Source of the DNA: Octopus bimaculoides
Lineage: Eukaryota
Length of the DNA stretch: 41,199 nt
Assembly (NCBI RefSeq): GCF_001194135.2
Contig: NC_068986.1
Span: 47,059,391-47,100,589 of the forward strand
Direction: 5' to 3'
Shown one piece after another: positions 1 through 41,199 of the stretch. Made by a program: the position numbers and the translations under genes. The notes under the pieces were generated by a model, which was not told the DNA's origin, searched no databases, and was given only the letters and a program-made list of their open reading frames with translations. The number at the start of each line of letters is the position of its first letter. Position 1 is the first letter of the stretch.

Positions 1-299
1 ACCGCCTGACTGGCTCCCGTAGGATTTTTGAGCGAGATCGTTGCCAGTGCCCCTGGACTGGCTTGTGCGGGTGGCACATAAAAGACACCATTTCGAGCGT
101 GGCCGTTTTCGTGCGGGTGACACGTAAAAGCACCCACTACACTCTCTGAGTGGTTGGCGTTAGGAAGGGCATCCAGCTGTAGAAACTCTGCCAAATTAGA
201 TTGGAGCCTGGTGTTGCCATCCGGTTTCACCAGTCCTCAGTCAAATCGTCCAACCCATGCTAGCATGGAAAGCGGACGTTAAACGATGATGATGATGAT
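1..299 (+). mobile_element. Young SINE-like retroelement, 3' part with (GAT)n tail; 5' end cut by the window edge
   Basis: Contains GTGGTTGGCGTTAGGAAGGGCATCCAGCTGTAGAAA core and ends AAACGATGATGATGATGAT. Near-identical reverse-complement copy at 40904-41199; decayed copies at ~2560, 3900, 23005, 27128, 30523, 31795, 37090. Confidence 0.85.
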
Positions 300-455
300 A
301 TATATATATATATATATACTTATAGCTGAAGACTAATTGGTATTTTTAGCAGGAAGGATAGCATTTGTAAAAATTATATTTGACAAAAAATAAATAAATT
401 CAAGTAGTATCATAAAAAATGTAAAATAAAAAAAGGGATTAACATAGCTTAGATT

Positions 456-666
456 TTAACCATTTAGCATTCAGTTTACTCTGTCAAATGTAAAGCGTAT
501 TTATTCACATTGTTTTGAATGAGTCATGCATTATTTGGTGATGTGGTTGTTTATTTTTAGGATGACATTGCCGGGCAGGTGTGAAAGGCTAGACGTGGCT
601 GCTTTAAACAAAAAACAGGCAGAAAATTTGAATTGGATATGACCAGTTTAAATGTTAAATGGTTAA
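456..666. mobile_element. TTAA-flanked MITE (piggyBac-like non-autonomous DNA transposon), ~203 bp
   Basis: TTAA(456-459)|CCATTTAGCATT ... AATGTTAAATGG|TTAA(663-666): 12-bp TIR with 1 mismatch and a TTAA target duplication. Confidence 0.75.
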
Positions 667-729
667 ATAAACCCCCAAAATATTTTGTTTAGTTATGTTG
701 ACATTATACGATAGATAATGACTGTTTAC

Positions 730-939
730 CTTGAAGTCGTCTGCTGAGTTCAGTTGTGAAGAGAACTTTTGCTAGGTGACTTTGGTAAAATGCCTCACGG
801 TTATCATACTTCTGTGCACTATTCAAATCCTGCCAGTTCATGGAACCGTTTTTAAAAGAATGACTACAAATATTCAGAATACGACTTGGTGCAGATTTTT
901 TTAATTTGTCCAAAAGTAAAACTGTCAGTAAGAAATGGC
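730..939 (-). CDS. RDH13: RDH13-like SDR, coding exon 5 (210 nt): GHFLLTVLLLDKLKKSAPSRILNICSHSF...REAFYQSHLAKVLFTTELSRRLQ(G); downstream exons lie left of the window
   Basis: ttttgcag|GC acceptor at 940-941 and G|gtaaac donor at 729. Phase 1/1 matches the previous exon. Aligns by eye to the RDH11-14 GHFLLT...SRIVNVSS...YxxSKLANVLFTxEL segment. Confidence 0.93.
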
Positions 940-1744: not shown

Positions 1745-1849
1745 CTAAATAATTTACACCTAACTGTTGTTCAAAACCATCTTCAGTTAAGGATTTAGGA
1801 CTGCACATCACCCCTGCATTGTTGATTAGAATGTCTAAACGGTTTTCAG
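1745..1849 (-). CDS. RDH13: RDH13-like SDR, coding exon 4 (105 nt): [35 protein letters not shown](G)
   Basis: ttttttcag| acceptor and G|gtaagt donor. Contains NNAG and TEDGFE..GVNxLG motifs; phase 1/1. Confidence 0.95.
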
Positions 1850-2236: not shown

Positions 2237-2392
2237 TTTTGTTAAATGCATCAGCAAATGCCTTAATAGATTTGATGGAAGCAAGATCTAGTTTTCTGCA
2301 GTGAATATTTAGGTTGGCAGTCTGGTGTATAATTTCTTTCTGAGCTTCAGCACATCGTTCCATGTCACGACAGGCAAGAATTATCCTTCCAC
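2237..2392 (-). CDS. RDH13: RDH13-like SDR, coding exon 3 (156 nt): RGRIILACRDMERCAEAQKEIIHQTANLNIHCRKLDLASIKSIKAFADAFNK
   Basis: ttttctag| acceptor and |gtaagt donor. Contains IILACRD and LDLAS motifs; phase 1/1. Confidence 0.95.
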
Positions 2393-2935: not shown

Positions 2936-3054
2936 GTTTATATGCCAGACCTGTAGCAACAGCCTTCCCAATGCCACTGTTGGCTCCAGTTATGACGACT
3001 GTCTTACCAGCAATCTTCTCTTTCCCTTCATATTTGGAACCACCAAGATAGTCC
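2936..3054 (-). CDS. RDH13: RDH13-like SDR, coding exon 2 (119 nt): DYLGGSKYEGKEKIAGKTVVITGANSGIGKAVATGLAYK
   Basis: ttttgttag| acceptor and C|gtgagt donor. Rossmann motif TGANSGIG (TGxxxGIG); phase 2/1. Confidence 0.95.
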
Positions 3055-3199: not shown

Positions 3200-3610
3200 A
3201 TACACTTTTACTCTTTTAATGGTTTCAATCTTCTGACTGTGGCCATGCTGGAGCACCGCCTTTAGTCGAGCAAATCGACTCCAGGACTTATTCTTTGGAA
3301 GCCTAGTACTTAGTCTATTGGTCTCTTTTGCCGAACGGCTAAGTTACGGAGACGTAAACACACCAGCATCGGTTGTCAAGCGATGTTGGGGGGACAAACA
3401 CAGACACACAAACACATACATGTATATATATATATATATACATATATACGACGGGCTTCTTTCAGTTTCTGTCTACCAAATTCACTCACAAGGCTTAGGT
3501 TGGCCCGAGGCTATAGTAGAAGACACTTGTCCAAGGTGCCACGCAGTGGGACTGAAGCTGGAACCACGTGGTTGGTAAGCTACTTACCACATAGCCACTC
3601 CTATGCCTAT
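3200..3610 (-). mobile_element. tRNA-derived SINE (octopus OK/OR-type) with internal (CA)/(TA) tract
   Basis: The minus strand starts with a tRNA-like head AGGAGTGGCTATGTGGTAAG...GGTTCCAGCTTCAGTCCCACTGCGTGGCACCTTGGACAAGTGTCTTC. Homologous copies at ~16500, 23985, 25255, 27895, 37375, 40015. Confidence 0.8.
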
Positions 3611-4865: not shown

Positions 4866-4954
4866 TTTAGCAATACTGAAGCACCAGCAATTGTTCCAAT
4901 GAAACTTAAGGGATAAAAAAATTTGTTGAGTGATCGCTGAAGTCTTCGTGCCAT
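4866..4954 (-). CDS. RDH13: RDH13-like SDR, first coding exon: MARRLQRSLNKFFYPLSFIGTIAGASVLL(K); the exon itself spans 4866-4961
   Basis: ttttaaaag| acceptor at 4962-4963, ATG at 4954-4952, AA|gtaagt donor in phase 2 giving LLK-DY. Closely resembles the vertebrate RDH13 N-terminus as recalled (PLSALGTVAGAAVLLKDY). Confidence 0.9.
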
Positions 4955-24322: not shown

Positions 24323-24786
24323 NNNNNNNNNNNNNNNNNNNNNNNNNNNNNNNNNNNNNNNNNNNNNNNNNNNNNNNNNNNNNNNNNNNNNNNNNNNNNN
24401 NNNNNNNNNNNNNNNNNNNNNNNNNNNNNNNNNNNNNNNNNNNNNNNNNNNNNNNNNNNNNNNNNNNNNNNNNNNNNNNNNNNNNNNNNNNNNNNNNNNN
24501 NNNNNNNNNNNNNNNNNNNNNNNNNNNNNNNNNNNNNNNNNNNNNNNNNNNNNNNNNNNNNNNNNNNNNNNNNNNNNNNNNNNNNNNNNNNNNNNNNNNN
24601 NNNNNNNNNNNNNNNNNNNNNNNNNNNNNNNNNNNNNNNNNNNNNNNNNNNNNNNNNNNNNNNNNNNNNNNNNNNNNNNNNNNNNNNNNNNNNNNNNNNN
24701 NNNNNNNNNNNNNNNNNNNNNNNNNNNNNNNNNNNNNNNNNNNNNNNNNNNNNNNNNNNNNNNNNNNNNNNNNNNNNNNNNNNNNN
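24323..24786. other. Assembly gap
   Basis: N run. Confidence 1.
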
Positions 24787-26625: not shown

Positions 26626-27127
26626 CACACACACACGCACACACACATACACATACATTTATGCAAATAGGGAGCAACTTTTCTTTAAACGTTTCATTAA
26701 AGACACGACTATTGCGTGTTGTAGAGGGAGGTAACTCCTAGTCATTTCCTGTACAACGGTTATAATTCTGCCAGGCGGATGCTGTTGTAGGGATTGTTTC
26801 ACAGCTGAATTCTGTGGGTAATATTCAGTCATCTGAGAAATTTGTTCATAATCCTAGCGGAACCTCCACTGATAATGACAATTGGACAAATCCACTGACT
26901 TACTATTAAGTGACGCTGCATTCTACTTCAGGTTTTGGAACTTTCTGGTAGTCAGGTTCCACTGTTGTATGTCCCAGAAAAATCTATGACATTCCATGCC
27001 CTTGGTTGGTAAGGTTCCTTTGCTAATTGTGACAAAATTGTGGAATTTTTTCTTAGTTCCTTAATCTGAATGAGTGGATGAAGGATACAATAAAAGAACT
27101 GTTTGTAGTTATATATATATATATCAG

Positions 27128-27480
27128 CATCATCATCGTTTAACGTCCGCTTTCCATGTTAGCATGGGTTGGACGATTAGACTGAGGATTGGCAAACCAG
27201 ATGGCTACACCAGTCTCCAATCTGATTTGGCAGAGTTTCTACAGCTGGTAACGATCTCGCTCAAATGGTGCTATTTACGTGCCACTGGCACGGAAGCCAG
27301 ATAGCTACTCTGGCAACAATCATGATCAGACGGTGCTCTTAGCGCTCCAATGGTACAGGTGCCATCACGATTTCACTTTCACTTGCCCCAACAGGTCTTC
27401 GCAGGCCGAGTTTCATGTCCAATGAAGGAGAGGTTGGCATGGGTGCCAGTCGTCGAATTAGGTTCGATTTCGATTTCACT
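27128..27480 (-). mobile_element. (GAT)n-family SINE
   Basis: CATCATCATCGTTTAACGTCCGCTTTCCATG...GGCAGAGTTTCTACAGCTGG. Confidence 0.75.
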
Positions 27481-27894: not shown

Positions 27895-28050
27895 TGGGGC
27901 TTCTTTCAGTTTTCGTCTATTGAAACTACTCACAAGACTTTGGTTAGCTCAGAGCTATAGTAGAAGACACTTGCCCAAGGTGCCATGCAGTGGGGATGAA
28001 CCTGAAACCATGTGATTGAGAACTAAACTTTGTAACCACACAGCCATATA
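27895..28050 (-). mobile_element. OK/OR-type SINE 5' part
   Basis: GGGCTTCTTTCAGTTT...AGAAGACACTTGCCCAAGGTGCCATGCAGTGGG. Confidence 0.7.
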
Positions 28051-28248: not shown

Positions 28249-28632
28249 NNNNNNNNNNNNNNNNNNNNNNNNNNNNNNNNNNNNNNNNNNNNNNNNNNNN
28301 NNNNNNNNNNNNNNNNNNNNNNNNNNNNNNNNNNNNNNNNNNNNNNNNNNNNNNNNNNNNNNNNNNNNNNNNNNNNNNNNNNNNNNNNNNNNNNNNNNNN
28401 NNNNNNNNNNNNNNNNNNNNNNNNNNNNNNNNNNNNNNNNNNNNNNNNNNNNNNNNNNNNNNNNNNNNNNNNNNNNNNNNNNNNNNNNNNNNNNNNNNNN
28501 NNNNNNNNNNNNNNNNNNNNNNNNNNNNNNNNNNNNNNNNNNNNNNNNNNNNNNNNNNNNNNNNNNNNNNNNNNNNNNNNNNNNNNNNNNNNNNNNNNNN
28601 NNNNNNNNNNNNNNNNNNNNNNNNNNNNNNNN
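28249..28632. other. Assembly gap between (AT)n tracts
   Basis: N run. Confidence 1.
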
Positions 28633-30510: not shown

Positions 30511-30522
30511 TGTATACATATA

Positions 30523-30670
30523 TCATCATCATCGTTTAACGTCTGTTTTCCATGCTAGCATGGGTTGGACGATTTGACTGAGGACTGGTGAATCAGATGG
30601 CTACACCAGGCCCCAATCTGATTTGGCAGAGTTTCTACAGCTGGACGCCCTTCCTAACGTCAAGGATGCC
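30523..30670 (-). mobile_element. (GAT)n-family SINE 3' part
   Basis: Close match to 40904-41070. Confidence 0.75.
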
Positions 30671-33336: not shown

Positions 33337-33516
33337 NNNNNNNNNNNNNNNNNNNNNNNNNNNNNNNNNNNNNNNNNNNNNNNNNNNNNNNNNNNNNNNN
33401 NNNNNNNNNNNNNNNNNNNNNNNNNNNNNNNNNNNNNNNNNNNNNNNNNNNNNNNNNNNNNNNNNNNNNNNNNNNNNNNNNNNNNNNNNNNNNNNNNNNN
33501 NNNNNNNNNNNNNNNN
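33337..33516. other. Assembly gap within microsatellites
   Basis: N run. Confidence 1.
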
Positions 33517-33880: not shown

Positions 33881-35334
33881 TTAATTTGTGTATGCAGTTG
33901 AGTACCACGGTCCTGAAGATCGATGACTACTATGGTCATAGGAAGGAGTATTATTACCATTGTTCATATGACTATAATGGGTATACTCTGAGGATGTTGG
34001 GATGTATGGACCAGAAGCTTGAAATCCTGTAGATTTTGTATGATCATATTCAAGGTTTTGAGGTGAGGTGACAGTTAATGTATAGCCAGCTTGTGGTTTG
34101 ACAGGTATACGCTGGATTGCAGAATTGTCGGCTGGAAGACTTGTACATTGAGTGGTACTATCCACATAGCTAACATCGGTGAAGGGTGAGTGCAATTTGT
34201 CTTGAGGAGAGACAGAAGATGGGGGTGTGATGCTGTAAGAGTCTGACATAGCATTACAAGACATAGAAACGGTTAATGGAGTGGATGCATATGTAGAAGC
34301 AGCATACTGTGTATCTTGGTTGATTGGAGCCTTGCTTCCATTTGGCATTGATGACATTGATGCATTTGTTGGATCTTTATAGCCACCGTCACCACTAGGT
34401 GGCGTTAGCATACTTACAGGAATGTCATTATAACATTGTGGACGACTGCTTCGAATGACGGATTCTCGATTGGCAAAAATTGACCTCAGAAGATTTGAAG
34501 CAGGAAGAGAATCCGATGCATTCTGATGAGATCCAATCCATTGTATTGTTGGCTTGTGACGTGACTGATAACGGTTATTCATTTCTCCATTCATATTGGA
34601 ATCAGGATTTTCCGTAATTGTTGGCAGGTGCCGGTTCATCACATCTTCTAAGTCTTTAACCGAGGTGTGTTGGTGTGAGAAGTCAGGAGTGTTACTTTCA
34701 ACAGTATTTGTCCAATCTGATGTACAATCTCTATTAGATGTTGAATTTGGTAAATGTGAATTCTGAACTGGAGAGTGAACTATAGTCACTGATTTTGTTG
34801 ATAAGTCTTCAGGTATTGGAGATGAAATGTTAGCTGTTAGTTTCTCTTGATTTCTCATTGACATAGCCACATTTGATTTTATGTGATTCATCTCCCCTGA
34901 ATTATTTTTGTTGTCATCAATGCTACTGATGAGACGAGTGATCTTACTGTCCATATCTTTATGGTCACTAAGAAATTCATCCTCCAAATAGTTATCTTCA
35001 ATGGTTTCATTTTCTCGACGACGTTTTCTTGGCTTTTCTGCTTTGCGTCTCGAATTTTTGTTGTCCAGTTTAATTGTTTCATTGCCTTTGTCAATAAACA
35101 TGGAGCAGTTGTCGTTGACCTCATTCTGGTCATTGTTATTGTTGGATAATTTGGATTGTACCCCTGTAAAGAGAGCTTCAGACTCTTGACTCACTGACTG
35201 CTTATCATAATGACCTTCTATATTATTCTGATTATTAGCAGACATTGTAGAAGAGGGTTTCATGGAAATGGATTGTGAGCTAATTCCACCTTGATTATCA
35301 TTTTTATGACTTTTATCTTTCGTTTTCCGACAGT
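33881..35334 (-). CDS. trh: Trachealess/NPAS1/3-like bHLH-PAS factor, terminal coding exon (disordered N/S/P-rich C-terminus with NLS KPRKRRRE)
   Basis: tttttccag|AC acceptor at 35335-35336. Phase 1 continues DCRKTKDK...SIS into the 460-aa ORF 33881..35263, which ends in TAA. Contains VKDLEDVMNRHLP, TIQWIG and LLRSIFANRESVIR blocks. Confidence 0.9.
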
Positions 35335-37089: not shown

Positions 37090-37323
37090 TAACCATCACT
37101 ATCCTTTTAATGTCCATTTTTCTATGTTGGCATGAGTCAGATGAAATTTGTTGAGGCAAATTTCTTCAGATAGATCCCTTTACTGTTGCCAACTCTCACC
37201 TGTTTCAAGTAAGGGAATATTTATCCCTAGTTGTACATGTTTCCATGGAAAATTGGAAACAAAGGCCACCGCTTGTATGATAGAGATGTTCGTTTATAGC
37301 CATCACATAATGCCAAGTCAAGG

Positions 37324-37371
<48 letters not shown>

Positions 37372-37510
37372 ATGACTGGCTTCTTTCAGTTTCTGTCTAC
37401 AAAATCTACTTACTAGTTTTTCGTTGACCTGCAGGTACAGTAGAAGACATTTAATCTAGATACCATACAGTGGGACTAAACCTGAGACCTTGGGGTTGGG
37501 AAATAAACTT
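37090..37510 (-). mobile_element. SINE with (CA)n tract (head ~37375-37510, tail ~37090-37320)
   Basis: Reverse complement resembles 3709-4107. Confidence 0.65.
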
Positions 37511-38003
37511 CTTAATTTCTTTATAACAAGTGTTTTTATTTATAAAATGGTCCTCCCAAAATACAATGATATTTGTTTCAACACACTTTCACATCAAGAA
37601 CCTTGCAGGGGGTGGGGGGAGGGAAAGAAAGCTAATTTAGATTTATAAGTGGTTTATGGAAAATGGAGAATATCAAATTTCTAGAAAGAACTTGGAATGA
37701 CCTTGTCATAGTAAAATAAGTGAATGTGGATTAGAATAGTTTACAACAATCCCCTAAAGACAGGGGTGAGACTTGAGATCATTTGAGGAGGAAGTTGTAA
37801 TTTTTATTATTGTTTAACCCCAGGTTAGATCTGAGTAAGTGAGATCTATAACCAAAACTTTGCTTTTCAGCTTTTTGGGGGCCAATAAAAAAAAGAGCCA
37901 ATCAAGGGTTGTGGATTGGTAGAATTGTAAGACTTTTAGGCAAGATGTCTTGAGGTATTTGTTCTGGTTCTTTGTGATCTGAGTTCAAATCCTATCATGC
38001 GCA

Positions 38004-39145: not shown

Positions 39146-39535
39146 NNNNNNNNNNNNNNNNNNNNNNNNNNNNNNNNNNNNNNNNNNNNNNNNNNNNNNN
39201 NNNNNNNNNNNNNNNNNNNNNNNNNNNNNNNNNNNNNNNNNNNNNNNNNNNNNNNNNNNNNNNNNNNNNNNNNNNNNNNNNNNNNNNNNNNNNNNNNNNN
39301 NNNNNNNNNNNNNNNNNNNNNNNNNNNNNNNNNNNNNNNNNNNNNNNNNNNNNNNNNNNNNNNNNNNNNNNNNNNNNNNNNNNNNNNNNNNNNNNNNNNN
39401 NNNNNNNNNNNNNNNNNNNNNNNNNNNNNNNNNNNNNNNNNNNNNNNNNNNNNNNNNNNNNNNNNNNNNNNNNNNNNNNNNNNNNNNNNNNNNNNNNNNN
39501 NNNNNNNNNNNNNNNNNNNNNNNNNNNNNNNNNNN
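39146..39535. other. Assembly gap
   Basis: N run. Confidence 1.
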
Positions 39536-40903: not shown

Positions 40904-41199
40904 ATCATCATCATCATCATCATCATCATCGTTTAACATCCGCTTTCCATGCTAGCATGGGTTGGACGATTTGACTGAGGACTGGTGAAACCAGATGGCA
41001 ACACCAGGCTCCAATCTAAATTTGGCAGAGTTTCTACAGCTGGATGCCCTTCCTAACGCCAACCACTCAGAGAGTGTAGTAGGTGCTTTTACGTGTCACC
41101 CGCACGAAGGCCAGTCAGGCGATACTGGCAACGGCTACGCTCGAAATGGTGTCTTTTATGTGCCACCCGCACAAGAGCCAGTCCAGGGGCACTGGCAAC
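40904..41199 (-). mobile_element. Young (GAT)n-family SINE; 5' end cut by the window edge
   Basis: (CAT)n tail then GTTTAACATCCGCTTTCCATGCTAGCATGG...; reverse complement of 40-299 with few differences. Confidence 0.85.

What the first reader, a model, noticed from the sequence alone, without database searches (positions are those of the whole stretch)
730..860. RDH13-like gene with the catalytic YxxxK replaced by FxxxH: candidate cofactor/retinoid-binding pseudoenzyme
Seen: the exon reads GCA TTT TAC CAA AGT CAC CTA GCA AAA = A-F-Y-Q-S-H-L-A-K-VLFT. The family pattern is A-Y-x-x-S-K-L-A-N-VLFT, so the catalytic Tyr is Phe, the catalytic Lys is His and the next Asn is Lys. The usual VSS reads ICS. 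TGANSGIG, ACRD (NADP-type Arg), DLAS, NNAG and VNxLGHF are intact, all introns are GT-AG and in phase, and five exons carry no stops, so it does not look like a decaying pseudogene. Established: classical SDRs need Tyr and Lys for catalysis, and atypical SDRs lacking them can act as redox sensors or ligand carriers. Inference: this may be a non-catalytic NADP(H)/retinoid-binding protein, or a rewired active site using the shifted Tyr (+1) and Lys (+3). Cephalopods regenerate retinal with retinochrome, which could have freed an RDH for such a role. A-to-I editing could change CAC to CGC (Arg) or TAC to TGC (Cys) but cannot restore the Tyr.
Basis: partly seen in the sequence, partly recalled or inferred. 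Interest (0 to 1): 0.78.

Follow-up and report, generated by a model that had tools for sequence, protein, structure and literature searches.

The report
Catalytically disabled RDH13 of coleoid cephalopods
The octopus version of the retinol dehydrogenase 13 gene has lost the two residues that this enzyme family needs for catalysis, yet octopuses, argonauts and cuttlefish have kept it intact and tightly conserved, so it is probably a "dead enzyme" that now works by binding rather than by chemistry.

Summary
On the minus strand, window 4954-730 holds exons 1-5 of the 7-exon Octopus bimaculoides gene annotated "retinol dehydrogenase 13". Exon 5 reads A-F-Y-Q-S-H-L-A-K where 262 of 265 non-cephalopod relatives have Tyr and 263 have Lys.

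It is neither an assembly error nor a decaying pseudogene. All 14 full-length coleoid orthologues compared carry Phe at the Tyr site, His or Gln at the Lys site and Lys at +7. They come from three Octopus species, Argonauta, Sepia/Acanthosepion and a second, unidentified decapodiform lineage. They also share an 11-position signature, mostly near the active site, that no other sequence approaches.

Exon structure matches between octopus and cuttlefish, and the six downstream exon sizes match canonical abalone RDH13. dN/dS is about 0.10, against 0.077 for the canonical abalone enzyme, and about 0.055 over the cofactor-binding core. Cofactor motifs are intact, the AlphaFold model is confident (pLDDT 95), and spliced cuttlefish mRNAs carry the same codons.

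The best reading is a conserved NADP(H)-binding pseudoenzyme, like human HSDL1 (also Tyr to Phe). The retinoid and retinochrome link is untested and weakened. I rate it a new member of a known kind, of moderate interest.

The parts
4866..4954 (-). Exon 1 (ATG at 4954). It encodes aa 1-30, a basic N-terminus followed by a hydrophobic helix. The PLSxxGTxxG...LLKDY pattern is shared with RDH13 of other animals.
   Evidence: tblastn of P0001; sequence; exon chain in L006; alignment; AF2 helix 2-33
2936..3054 (-). Exon 2. It contains the glycine-rich dinucleotide-binding motif TGANSGIG (2990-2967).
2237..2392 (-). Exon 3. It contains ACRD (2375-2364, the Arg typical of NADP-preferring SDRs) and DLAS (2288-2277).
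1745..1849 (-). Exon 4. It contains NNAG (1823-1812) and the tetrad Asn154 (1754-1752), which is retained.
730..939 (-). Exon 5. It contains NICS with the retained tetrad Ser182 (865-863) and the altered active-site helix AFYQSHLAK (793-767).
788..790 (-). TTT = Phe207 at the position of the catalytic Tyr. It is Phe in all 14 full-length coleoid sequences (TTT or TTC) and Tyr in 262 of 265 other family members.
776..778 (-). CAC = His211 at the position of the catalytic Lys. It is His in octopods and one Sepia-type sequence, and Gln in the other decapodiforms.
767..769 (-). AAA = Lys214, at +7 from the Tyr position where the family has Asn in about 90% of sequences. It is invariant in coleoids.

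Best explanation
This is the coleoid-cephalopod orthologue of retinol dehydrogenase 13 (SDR7C family).

On the lineage leading to coleoids, before octopods and decapodiforms split, its active site was remodelled. Tyr became Phe, Lys became His or Gln, and nine further family-conserved positions changed. The Rossmann fold, the NADP(H)-binding motifs and the N-terminal membrane anchor were kept.

Shown here:
- the substitutions;
- their fixation across coleoids;
- strong purifying selection, strongest on the cofactor-binding core;
- expression as spliced mRNA in cuttlefish;
- a confident SDR fold model.

Inferred:
- Without the Tyr general acid and the Lys that lowers its pKa and holds the nicotinamide ribose, canonical carbonyl/alcohol oxidoreduction is lost or reduced by orders of magnitude. 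This follows from established SDR mechanism and from the natural Tyr-to-Phe protein HSDL1.
- The protein therefore acts as a pseudoenzyme. It is probably membrane-anchored, possibly mitochondrial like human RDH13.
- It still binds NADP(H), with His/Gln211 and/or the invariant Lys214 plausibly contacting the ribose.
- It exerts its function by binding: as a cofactor or redox sensor, a lipid or aldehyde binder, or a non-catalytic partner of an active SDR.
For: Identity:
- 100% match to O. bimaculoides 'retinol dehydrogenase 13'.
- Pfam adh_short scores 91 bits against a cut-off of 26.6.
- With canonical Haliotis RDH13 as query, the only named cephalopod proteins in the top 120 are these Phe-type ones.
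- Exon sizes are 89/119/156/105/210/208/97 in octopus and cuttlefish and 80/119/156/105/210/208/97 in Haliotis.

Substitutions fixed across coleoids:
- All 14 full-length coleoid sequences carry Phe207, His/Gln211 and Lys214.
- An 11-site signature (E61A, T62V/I, H155Y, S181C, H185F/L, Y207F, K211H/Q, N214K, H236Y, R246x, A282S) is present 11/11 in all coleoids. The best non-cephalopod sequence has 3/11.

Selection:
- NG86 dN/dS is 0.103 for Octopus-Argonauta (bootstrap 0.063-0.158).
- It is 0.107 for Sepia versus the second decapodiform lineage (0.066-0.163).
- Over residues 31-180 it is 0.054-0.061.
- The canonical Haliotis pair gives 0.077.

Relaxed constraint exactly at former catalytic or substrate-side positions: 208 is Y/S/C, 211 is H/Q, and 246 is N/T/G/S where the family has 99% Arg.

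Cofactor motifs TGxxxGIG, CRD, DLAS, NNAG, Asn154, Ser182, PG and Thr242 are retained.

Fold: AF2 pLDDT 95.3 and pTM 0.92, with helix 203-224 carrying residues 207, 211 and 214. The nearest solved folds are NADPH-dependent SDRs.

Expression:
- The A. pharaonis gene spans 11.8 kb with 6 introns, and the same protein is encoded without interruption on 15 short contigs from sequencing runs.
- P0126 is listed in 53 blocks of the collection; the 24 read all carry it on short contigs.
- One run is Sepia esculenta larval RNA-seq (PMC10466719).

Precedents:
[quoted passage not shown] 2009, title as cited in PMC9859523).
- Inactive SDR subunits exist in petunia benzaldehyde synthase and in BbsCD (PMC13418739).
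Against: - No activity, cofactor-binding or localisation data exist for this protein.
- Ser182 and Asn154 of the tetrad are kept. Selection on the substrate-side region is still strong (0.105-0.146), which could mean a ligand or substrate pocket is still in use.
- The invariant Lys214 and Tyr236 could belong to a non-canonical catalytic arrangement.
- I could not read side-chain geometry from the model, because the tool returns no coordinates.
- No transcript evidence for the Octopus genus itself was found in the collection. Cluster 1 holds only genome-derived proteins.
Confidence: 0.6

Rival explanations
1. It is still an oxidoreductase with a rewired active site. The invariant Lys214 lies one helical turn after position 211 on the same face. 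It would take over the ribose-binding and electrostatic role of the lost Lys. Another residue would donate the proton, for example the coleoid-specific Tyr236 of the YPG motif, or Ser182 with His/Gln211. The substrate may also have changed.
For: - Lys214, Tyr236, Cys181 and Phe185 are replacements that are themselves invariant or nearly so within coleoids. That indicates new constraint rather than mere relaxation.
- dN/dS of the active-site and substrate region stays low at 0.105-0.146.
- Ser182 and Asn154 are retained.
Against:
- Position 211 drifts between His and Gln, even within the Sepia cluster.
- The 99%-conserved Arg246 became variable.
- YPG also occurs in canonical members such as Capitella and Sinanodonta, so it is not a specific compensation.
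- No classical SDR is known to me to catalyse carbonyl reduction without the Tyr (own knowledge).
Confidence: 0.2
2. It is a non-catalytic retinoid carrier or chaperone of the cephalopod visual cycle. On this view RDH13 was freed from catalysis because retinochrome regenerates 11-cis-retinal.
For: - The ancestral family handles retinaldehyde: human RDH13 is a retinaldehyde reductase (Belyaeva 2008, cited in PMC3184775).
- The hydrophobic substrate-side region is still constrained.
- Reviews regard RDH involvement in mollusc visual cycles as open (PMC9776813, PMC8628405).
Against: - No eye or retina expression evidence was obtained. The one identified RNA-seq source is whole cuttlefish larvae.
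- The retinochrome system is reported across molluscs (PMC8628405), and their RDH13 proteins remain canonical. Retinochrome alone therefore does not explain the change.
- Cephalopods already have dedicated retinal shuttles, RALBP and RLBP1 (PMC8628405).
Confidence: 0.08
3. It is an artefact or a decaying gene: an assembly or annotation error, or a pseudogene on its way out.
For: Loss of two catalytic residues is what an inactivated gene would show. No Octopus transcript was found in the collection searched.
Against: - Independent assemblies of six species in the four lineages with genome data (three Octopus, Argonauta, A. pharaonis) plus cDNAs encode the same replacements.
- The 327-aa reading frame is intact with identical exon sizes in lineages whose synonymous sites are saturated (pS about 0.8).
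- dN/dS is about 0.10, like the canonical Haliotis gene.
- Spliced mRNAs exist in cuttlefish.
Confidence: 0.01

Closest known systems
Human and zebrafish HSDL1 (hydroxysteroid dehydrogenase-like 1, SDR12C3)
   Same: It is a classical-type SDR in which the catalytic Tyr is naturally Phe. The fold and cofactor motifs are kept. The protein is conserved among species although inactive (Meier et al. 2009, title cited in PMC9859523; the Phe detail is from my own knowledge).
   Different: It belongs to a different SDR family (SDR12C, not SDR7C). HSDL1 keeps the Lys (F-x-x-x-K), whereas here the Lys is also replaced. HSDL1 is an old separate paralogue found across vertebrates and amphioxus (PMC3184775). 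Here the single RDH13 orthologue of one clade was converted.
RDH13 (SDR7C3) of other animals, e.g. human mitochondrial retinaldehyde reductase and Haliotis RDH13-like
   Same: It is orthologous by best hits and placement in the tree. Both have 7 exons, and the six downstream exon sizes equal those of Haliotis. The N-terminal anchor and all NADP(H)-binding motifs are shared. Identity is 50-64%.
   Different: The catalysis consensus YxxSK reads FxxSH or FxxSQ. There is an 11-site coleoid-specific signature, mostly near the active site. The evolutionary rate is moderately higher.
Inactive SDR subunits of hetero-oligomeric enzymes (petunia benzaldehyde synthase beta, BbsCD, HSD17B8/CBR4-type assemblies)
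   Same: These are SDR-fold proteins with a broken catalytic tetrad. They are retained because they stabilise or complete an active partner (PMC13418739).
   Different: No partner is known here. PhBS-beta has also lost a cofactor-binding Arg, whereas the cephalopod protein keeps its cofactor motifs. No tandem paralogue lies within 36 kb upstream, and the downstream neighbour is SURF6.
Atypical SDRs used as NADPH sensors (NmrA, HSCARG/NMRAL1)
   Same: They have a Rossmann fold, bind NADP(H) and lack the catalytic Tyr. They act by binding and sensing (own knowledge).
   Different: They form a separate, anciently divergent SDR class with altered motifs. The cephalopod protein is a classical SDR by Pfam and by all motifs, and it lost catalysis much more recently.

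Membership tests
Classical short-chain dehydrogenases/reductases (Pfam PF00106 adh_short) | Significant match to the family profile and a Rossmann fold | tested here: met
   adh_short scores 91.4 bits (cut-off 26.6) on the window-encoded 197 aa. AF2 pLDDT is 95.3 with alternating strand-helix order. Foldseek top hits are all SDRs.
Classical short-chain dehydrogenases/reductases (Pfam PF00106 adh_short) | Cofactor-binding motifs TGxxxGxG and NNAG | tested here: met
   TGANSGIG (2990-2967) and NNAG (1823-1812) are present. They are invariant across coleoids.
Classical short-chain dehydrogenases/reductases (Pfam PF00106 adh_short) | Catalytic tetrad Asn-Ser-Tyr-Lys (YxxxK) | tested here: not met
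   Asn154 and Ser182 are present. Tyr is replaced by Phe207 and Lys by His211, or Gln in most decapodiforms.
SDR7C / RDH13 orthologous group | Closest relatives are RDH13 of other animals, and the group's members are mutually best matches | tested here: met
   All top hits are named RDH13 or RDH13-like. The Haliotis RDH13 query returns the Phe-type proteins as the only named cephalopod hits. Coleoids form one clade inside the RDH13 group in an NJ tree (the topology is only indicative).
SDR7C / RDH13 orthologous group | Conserved gene structure | tested here: met
   There are 7 exons. The six downstream exon sizes, 119/156/105/210/208/97, are identical in Octopus, Argonauta (last exon 100), Acanthosepion and Haliotis. 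Human RDH11/12/13 also have 7 exons (PMC9859523, Table 1).
SDR7C / RDH13 orthologous group | Catalysis consensus Y-x-x-S-K | tested here: not met
   The octopus protein reads F-Y-Q-S-H. The family table lists YCHSK for human RDH11, with no separate entry for RDH12/13 in the extracted text (PMC9859523).
SDR7C / RDH13 orthologous group | NADPH-dependent retinaldehyde reductase activity and mitochondrial inner-membrane location | not testable with these tools
   This needs biochemistry and cell biology. Only the conserved N-terminal hydrophobic segment is seen.
Conserved SDR pseudoenzymes (HSDL1-like situation) | Natural loss of a catalytic residue with fold and cofactor motifs retained | tested here: met
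Conserved SDR pseudoenzymes (HSDL1-like situation) | Conservation across species under purifying selection | tested here: met
   dN/dS is 0.10 in two independent coleoid pairs. The canonical Haliotis pair gives 0.077.
Conserved SDR pseudoenzymes (HSDL1-like situation) | Demonstrated lack of activity, restored by back-mutation | not testable with these tools
   This requires recombinant protein assays with F207Y and H211K variants.
HSDL1 family proper (SDR12C3) | Sequence membership in SDR12C | tested here: not met
   All close relatives are SDR7C RDH13 proteins. The resemblance to HSDL1 is functional, not one of descent.

The most novel reading that the evidence does not exclude
Coleoid cephalopods converted their only RDH13 orthologue into a protein with a new, selected active-site architecture: Phe207, His/Gln211, the relocated Lys214, Tyr236, Cys181 and Phe185. 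On this reading it is not merely dead. Either it performs a non-canonical NADPH-dependent reaction without the SDR Tyr, or it acts as a dedicated NADPH or retinoid sensor in mitochondria or photoreceptors. It would then be a clade-defining molecular innovation accompanying the coleoid radiation.
Probability: 0.15. Interest if true: 0.7.

Novelty: new member of a known kind. Interest (0 to 1): 0.45.

Why it matters
Databases name this gene "retinol dehydrogenase 13". Studies of cephalopod vision or retinoid signalling that count RDH genes would treat it as an active retinal reductase. The sequence evidence says it most likely is not one.

It adds a clean, datable example of an enzyme turned pseudoenzyme. 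The change is fixed before the octopod-decapodiform split and has been held under enzyme-like purifying selection since. It happened in the single orthologue rather than in a spare duplicate. That raises two questions: which protein now does RDH13's job in coleoids, and what does the retained NADP(H)-binding scaffold do?

The question is directly testable with recombinant protein and two back-mutations.

Tried and rejected
- **Downstream exons in window 1-729.** None found. Exons 6-7 lie outside the window.
- **Tandem paralogue in the window.** tblastn with octopus, Haliotis and elephant RDH13 finds only the five exons.
- **Shifted Tyr208 as a replacement catalytic residue.** Rejected, because it is not conserved.
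- **A family-wide or recurrent F-type variant.** Only sporadic single-species cases exist. These are Orussus and Ampulex (Y to F), Helobdella (Y to S, K to T) and Mytilus (K to Q, S to A). A search seeded with the Orussus protein found no conserved F clade.
- **A Nautilus-like intermediate.** I scored the 11-site signature in all retrieved sequences, unnamed ones included. None exceeded 3/11. Nautilus may simply be absent from the collection.
- **Canonical SDR7C paralogues in cephalopods.** I could not target them with the capped searches, because only the top 120 hits are listed. One search is therefore indirect evidence only.
- **RNA editing tables.** The Cell 2017 paper is not held and no held paper links editing to this gene.
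- **H. rufescens as a dN/dS baseline.** The exon chain could not be resolved, so I used H. rubra instead.
- **Literature on cephalopod RDH13.** Nothing specific was found.
- **Rfam, tRNA and repeat scans of the window.** Nothing relevant to the finding.
- **Side-chain geometry of Lys214 and Tyr236.** It could not be measured, because the structure tool returns no coordinates.

Full report
**What is in the window**

The finding lies on the minus strand. Reading 3600-500 in reverse complement and checking junctions gives four GT-AG-bounded exons. tblastn with the full protein adds a first exon with the ATG at 4954.

The five exons are 4954-4866, 3054-2936, 2392-2237, 1849-1745 and 939-730. They encode residues 1-226 without a stop. 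Nothing coding follows in 729-1.

The window is 100% identical to Octopus bimaculoides assembly GCA_001194135.2, chromosome CM046606.1. In that locus the gene has seven exons. Exons 6 and 7 lie beyond the window start, after a 2.7-kb intron. All six introns are GT-AG.

The motif reads GCA TTT TAC CAA AGT CAC CTA GCA AAA (793-767), which is A-F-Y-Q-S-H-L-A-K. NICS (874-863) replaces the usual NVSS. TGANSGIG, ACRD, DLAS, NNAG and VNYLGHF are present.

**Is Phe really at the Tyr position?**

The alignment around the motif has no gaps. A206, Q209, S210, L212, A213, L216, F217 and T218 all match the family. Phe207 therefore occupies the catalytic Tyr column and His211 the Lys column.

Among 265 non-cephalopod RDH13-like proteins collected in three searches, 262 have Tyr and 263 have Lys. 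Pfam places the protein in adh_short at 91 bits against a cut-off of 26.6.

**What the gene is**

The window-encoded protein is 100% identical to O. bimaculoides "retinol dehydrogenase 13". The entries are UniRef A0A0L8GQG5 and RefSeq XP_014778964.

- Every close hit is an RDH13 or RDH13-like protein of molluscs, arthropods, annelids and vertebrates, at 50-64% identity.
- I then queried with canonical Haliotis RDH13. The only named cephalopod proteins in the top 120 were again these Phe-type proteins. They therefore appear to be the RDH13 orthologue of cephalopods and not an extra divergent copy. Unnamed transcriptome entries cannot be excluded.
- Gene structure agrees. Exon sizes are 89/119/156/105/210/208/97 in Octopus and in the cuttlefish Acanthosepion pharaonis, 83/.../100 in Argonauta, and 80/119/156/105/210/208/97 in two Haliotis species with the canonical enzyme. 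Human RDH11/12/13 also have seven exons (PMC9859523).
- A rough NJ tree places the coleoid sequences as one clade within RDH13, with a moderately raised rate.
- The downstream neighbour is SURF6, in convergent orientation, in three octopod genomes.

**How widespread is the altered site?**

Seventeen cephalopod sequences were retrieved and 14 full-length ones were scored. They come from O. bimaculoides, O. sinensis, O. vulgaris, Argonauta hians, the Sepia/Acanthosepion cluster and a second, unidentified decapodiform cluster.

- All have Phe at 207 (codons TTT or TTC).
- Position 211 is His (CAC or CAT) in octopods and in one Sepia-type sequence, and Gln (CAA or CAG) in the rest.
- All have Lys at 214.

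A column-by-column comparison finds eleven positions that are at least 85% conserved in the family and replaced in every coleoid. These are E61A, T62V/I, H155Y, S181C, H185F/L, Y207F, K211H/Q, N214K, H236Y, R246 to N/T/G/S, and A282S.

Eight of them lie beside the tetrad residues, the PG motif or the substrate loop. All 14 coleoid sequences score 11/11 and the best non-cephalopod sequence scores 3/11.

Elsewhere in the family, loss of catalytic residues is sporadic and confined to single species: Orussus, Ampulex, Helobdella and Mytilus. The coleoid form is thus neither an artefact nor a family-wide variant. It is a clade-specific, fixed remodelling that predates the octopod-decapodiform split.

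**Is the gene under selection and expressed?**

| Pair | dN/dS (NG86) | Bootstrap range |
|---|---|---|
| Octopus-Argonauta (dS 0.99) | 0.103 | 0.063-0.158 |
| Sepia vs second decapodiform lineage (dS 1.15) | 0.107 | 0.066-0.163 |
| Residues 31-180, cofactor-binding core | 0.054-0.061 | n/a |
| Residues 181-270, active-site/substrate region | 0.105-0.146 | n/a |
| H. asinina-H. rubra, canonical enzyme | 0.077 | 0.039-0.126 |

Octopod-decapodiform comparisons are saturated at synonymous sites, yet the reading frame and exon sizes are unchanged. The Phe-type protein is therefore about as constrained as a working enzyme.

In A. pharaonis the gene spans 11.8 kb with six introns. The same protein is encoded without interruption on 15 short contigs assembled from sequencing runs. 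A close Sepia variant (P0126) is listed in 53 blocks of the collection, and the 24 that were read all carry it on short contigs.

One of these runs is RNA-seq of Sepia esculenta larvae (PMC10466719). These contigs are spliced mRNAs. All 19 contigs inspected carry TTT and CAT/CAA/CAG, so the RNA consensus is not edited at these codons. No transcript of the Octopus genus itself was present in the collection.

**Structure**

With a 99-sequence alignment, AlphaFold2 gives pLDDT 95.3 and pTM 0.92.

- The model has a long N-terminal helix (2-33) and a regular Rossmann core.
- A helix at 203-224 carries residues 207, 211 and 214.
- The nearest solved folds are NADPH-dependent SDRs: light-dependent protochlorophyllide reductases and 3rd5.
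- By helical periodicity, 207, 211 and 214 lie on one face. Residue 208 points away. This is an inference, because the tool returns no coordinates.

**Most likely mechanism**

In classical SDRs the Tyr is the general acid/base. The Lys lowers its pKa and binds the nicotinamide ribose (established mechanism, summarised in PMC13418739). With Phe and His/Gln in their places, canonical carbonyl/alcohol oxidoreduction should be lost or reduced by orders of magnitude.

Selection is strongest on the cofactor-binding half, and every cofactor motif is kept. The former catalytic or substrate positions 208, 211 and 246 have become variable.

The best-supported reading is a conserved pseudoenzyme with three properties:

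- It still folds and still binds NADP(H), possibly with Lys214 and His/Gln211 holding the ribose.
- It keeps the RDH13-type N-terminal anchor.
- It acts through binding, as a sensor, ligand binder or non-catalytic partner.

I put this at about 0.6.

The main rival, at about 0.2, is a rewired but active site built on the invariant Lys214 and Tyr236. The rhodopsin-retinochrome system is reported across molluscs (PMC8628405), and their RDH13 proteins stay canonical. Artefact or decay is effectively excluded.

**Comparison with known cases**

The closest precedent is HSDL1, a classical SDR with a natural Tyr-to-Phe change. It is described as inactive but conserved among species (Meier et al. 2009, cited in PMC9859523).

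Inactive SDR subunits also exist in hetero-oligomeric enzymes, namely petunia benzaldehyde synthase beta and BbsCD (PMC13418739).

The cephalopod protein is not a member of those families. It is an SDR7C RDH13 orthologue that fails the catalytic-tetrad criterion.

I found no paper describing this feature of cephalopod RDH13. I rate it a new member of a known kind, the conserved SDR pseudoenzyme. Its interest is moderate. It corrects a functional annotation relevant to cephalopod retinoid biology, and it gives a datable, testable case in which an orthologue rather than a duplicate lost catalysis.

Noticed in passing
window 33881-35263 (minus strand): A 460-aa open reading frame rich in Ser, Asn and Thr. 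It has no Pfam match and no exact product on record. It lies about 29 kb upstream of the RDH13 start on the same strand and ends in a stop, so it may be the terminal exon of a neighbouring gene.
   Followed up: partly
window 24323-24786, 28249-28632, 33337-33516, 39146-39535: Four assembly gaps (runs of N), each flanked by TA/TATA/TATATACA microsatellites. The large 'repeats' and long ORFs reported there by the tools are artefacts of the N runs.
   Followed up: yes
window 1-297, 27110-27248, 30513-30663, 40916-41199; also 3395-3591, 27898-28035, 37319-37515: Two families of short interspersed repeats, 72-97% alike and in both orientations, including copies inside introns 1 and 2 of the RDH13 gene. 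ARAGORN finds no tRNA-like head and Rfam finds nothing.
   Followed up: partly
L004, L005, L006 (outside the window, downstream of the gene): A SURF6-domain gene lies convergently 2.4-3.7 kb downstream of the RDH13 gene in O. bimaculoides, O. sinensis and Argonauta hians. This is conserved local synteny.
   Followed up: no
proteins P0029 (Mytilus), P0090 (Helobdella), P0035 (Orussus), P0240 (Ampulex): Isolated RDH13-like proteins of other invertebrates also lack tetrad residues. Mytilus has K to Q and S to A, Helobdella has Y to S and K to T, and the two wasps have Y to F. None forms a conserved clade in the data retrieved, and each could be a lineage-specific dead copy or an error.
   Followed up: partly
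L001 versus L007-L016 (Sepia-type cDNAs), codon 211: Sequences less than 2% diverged at non-synonymous sites differ at the former Lys position: CAT (His) against CAA (Gln). This is a T/A difference, so it is not A-to-I editing. It shows the position is now free to drift between His and Gln.
   Followed up: yes
window 785-787 (codon 208, TAC): Octopus Tyr208 (TAC) corresponds to Cys (TGC) in all decapodiform genomes and cDNAs. A-to-I editing of the octopus codon would produce exactly the decapodiform residue. No read-level data were available to check this.
   Followed up: no
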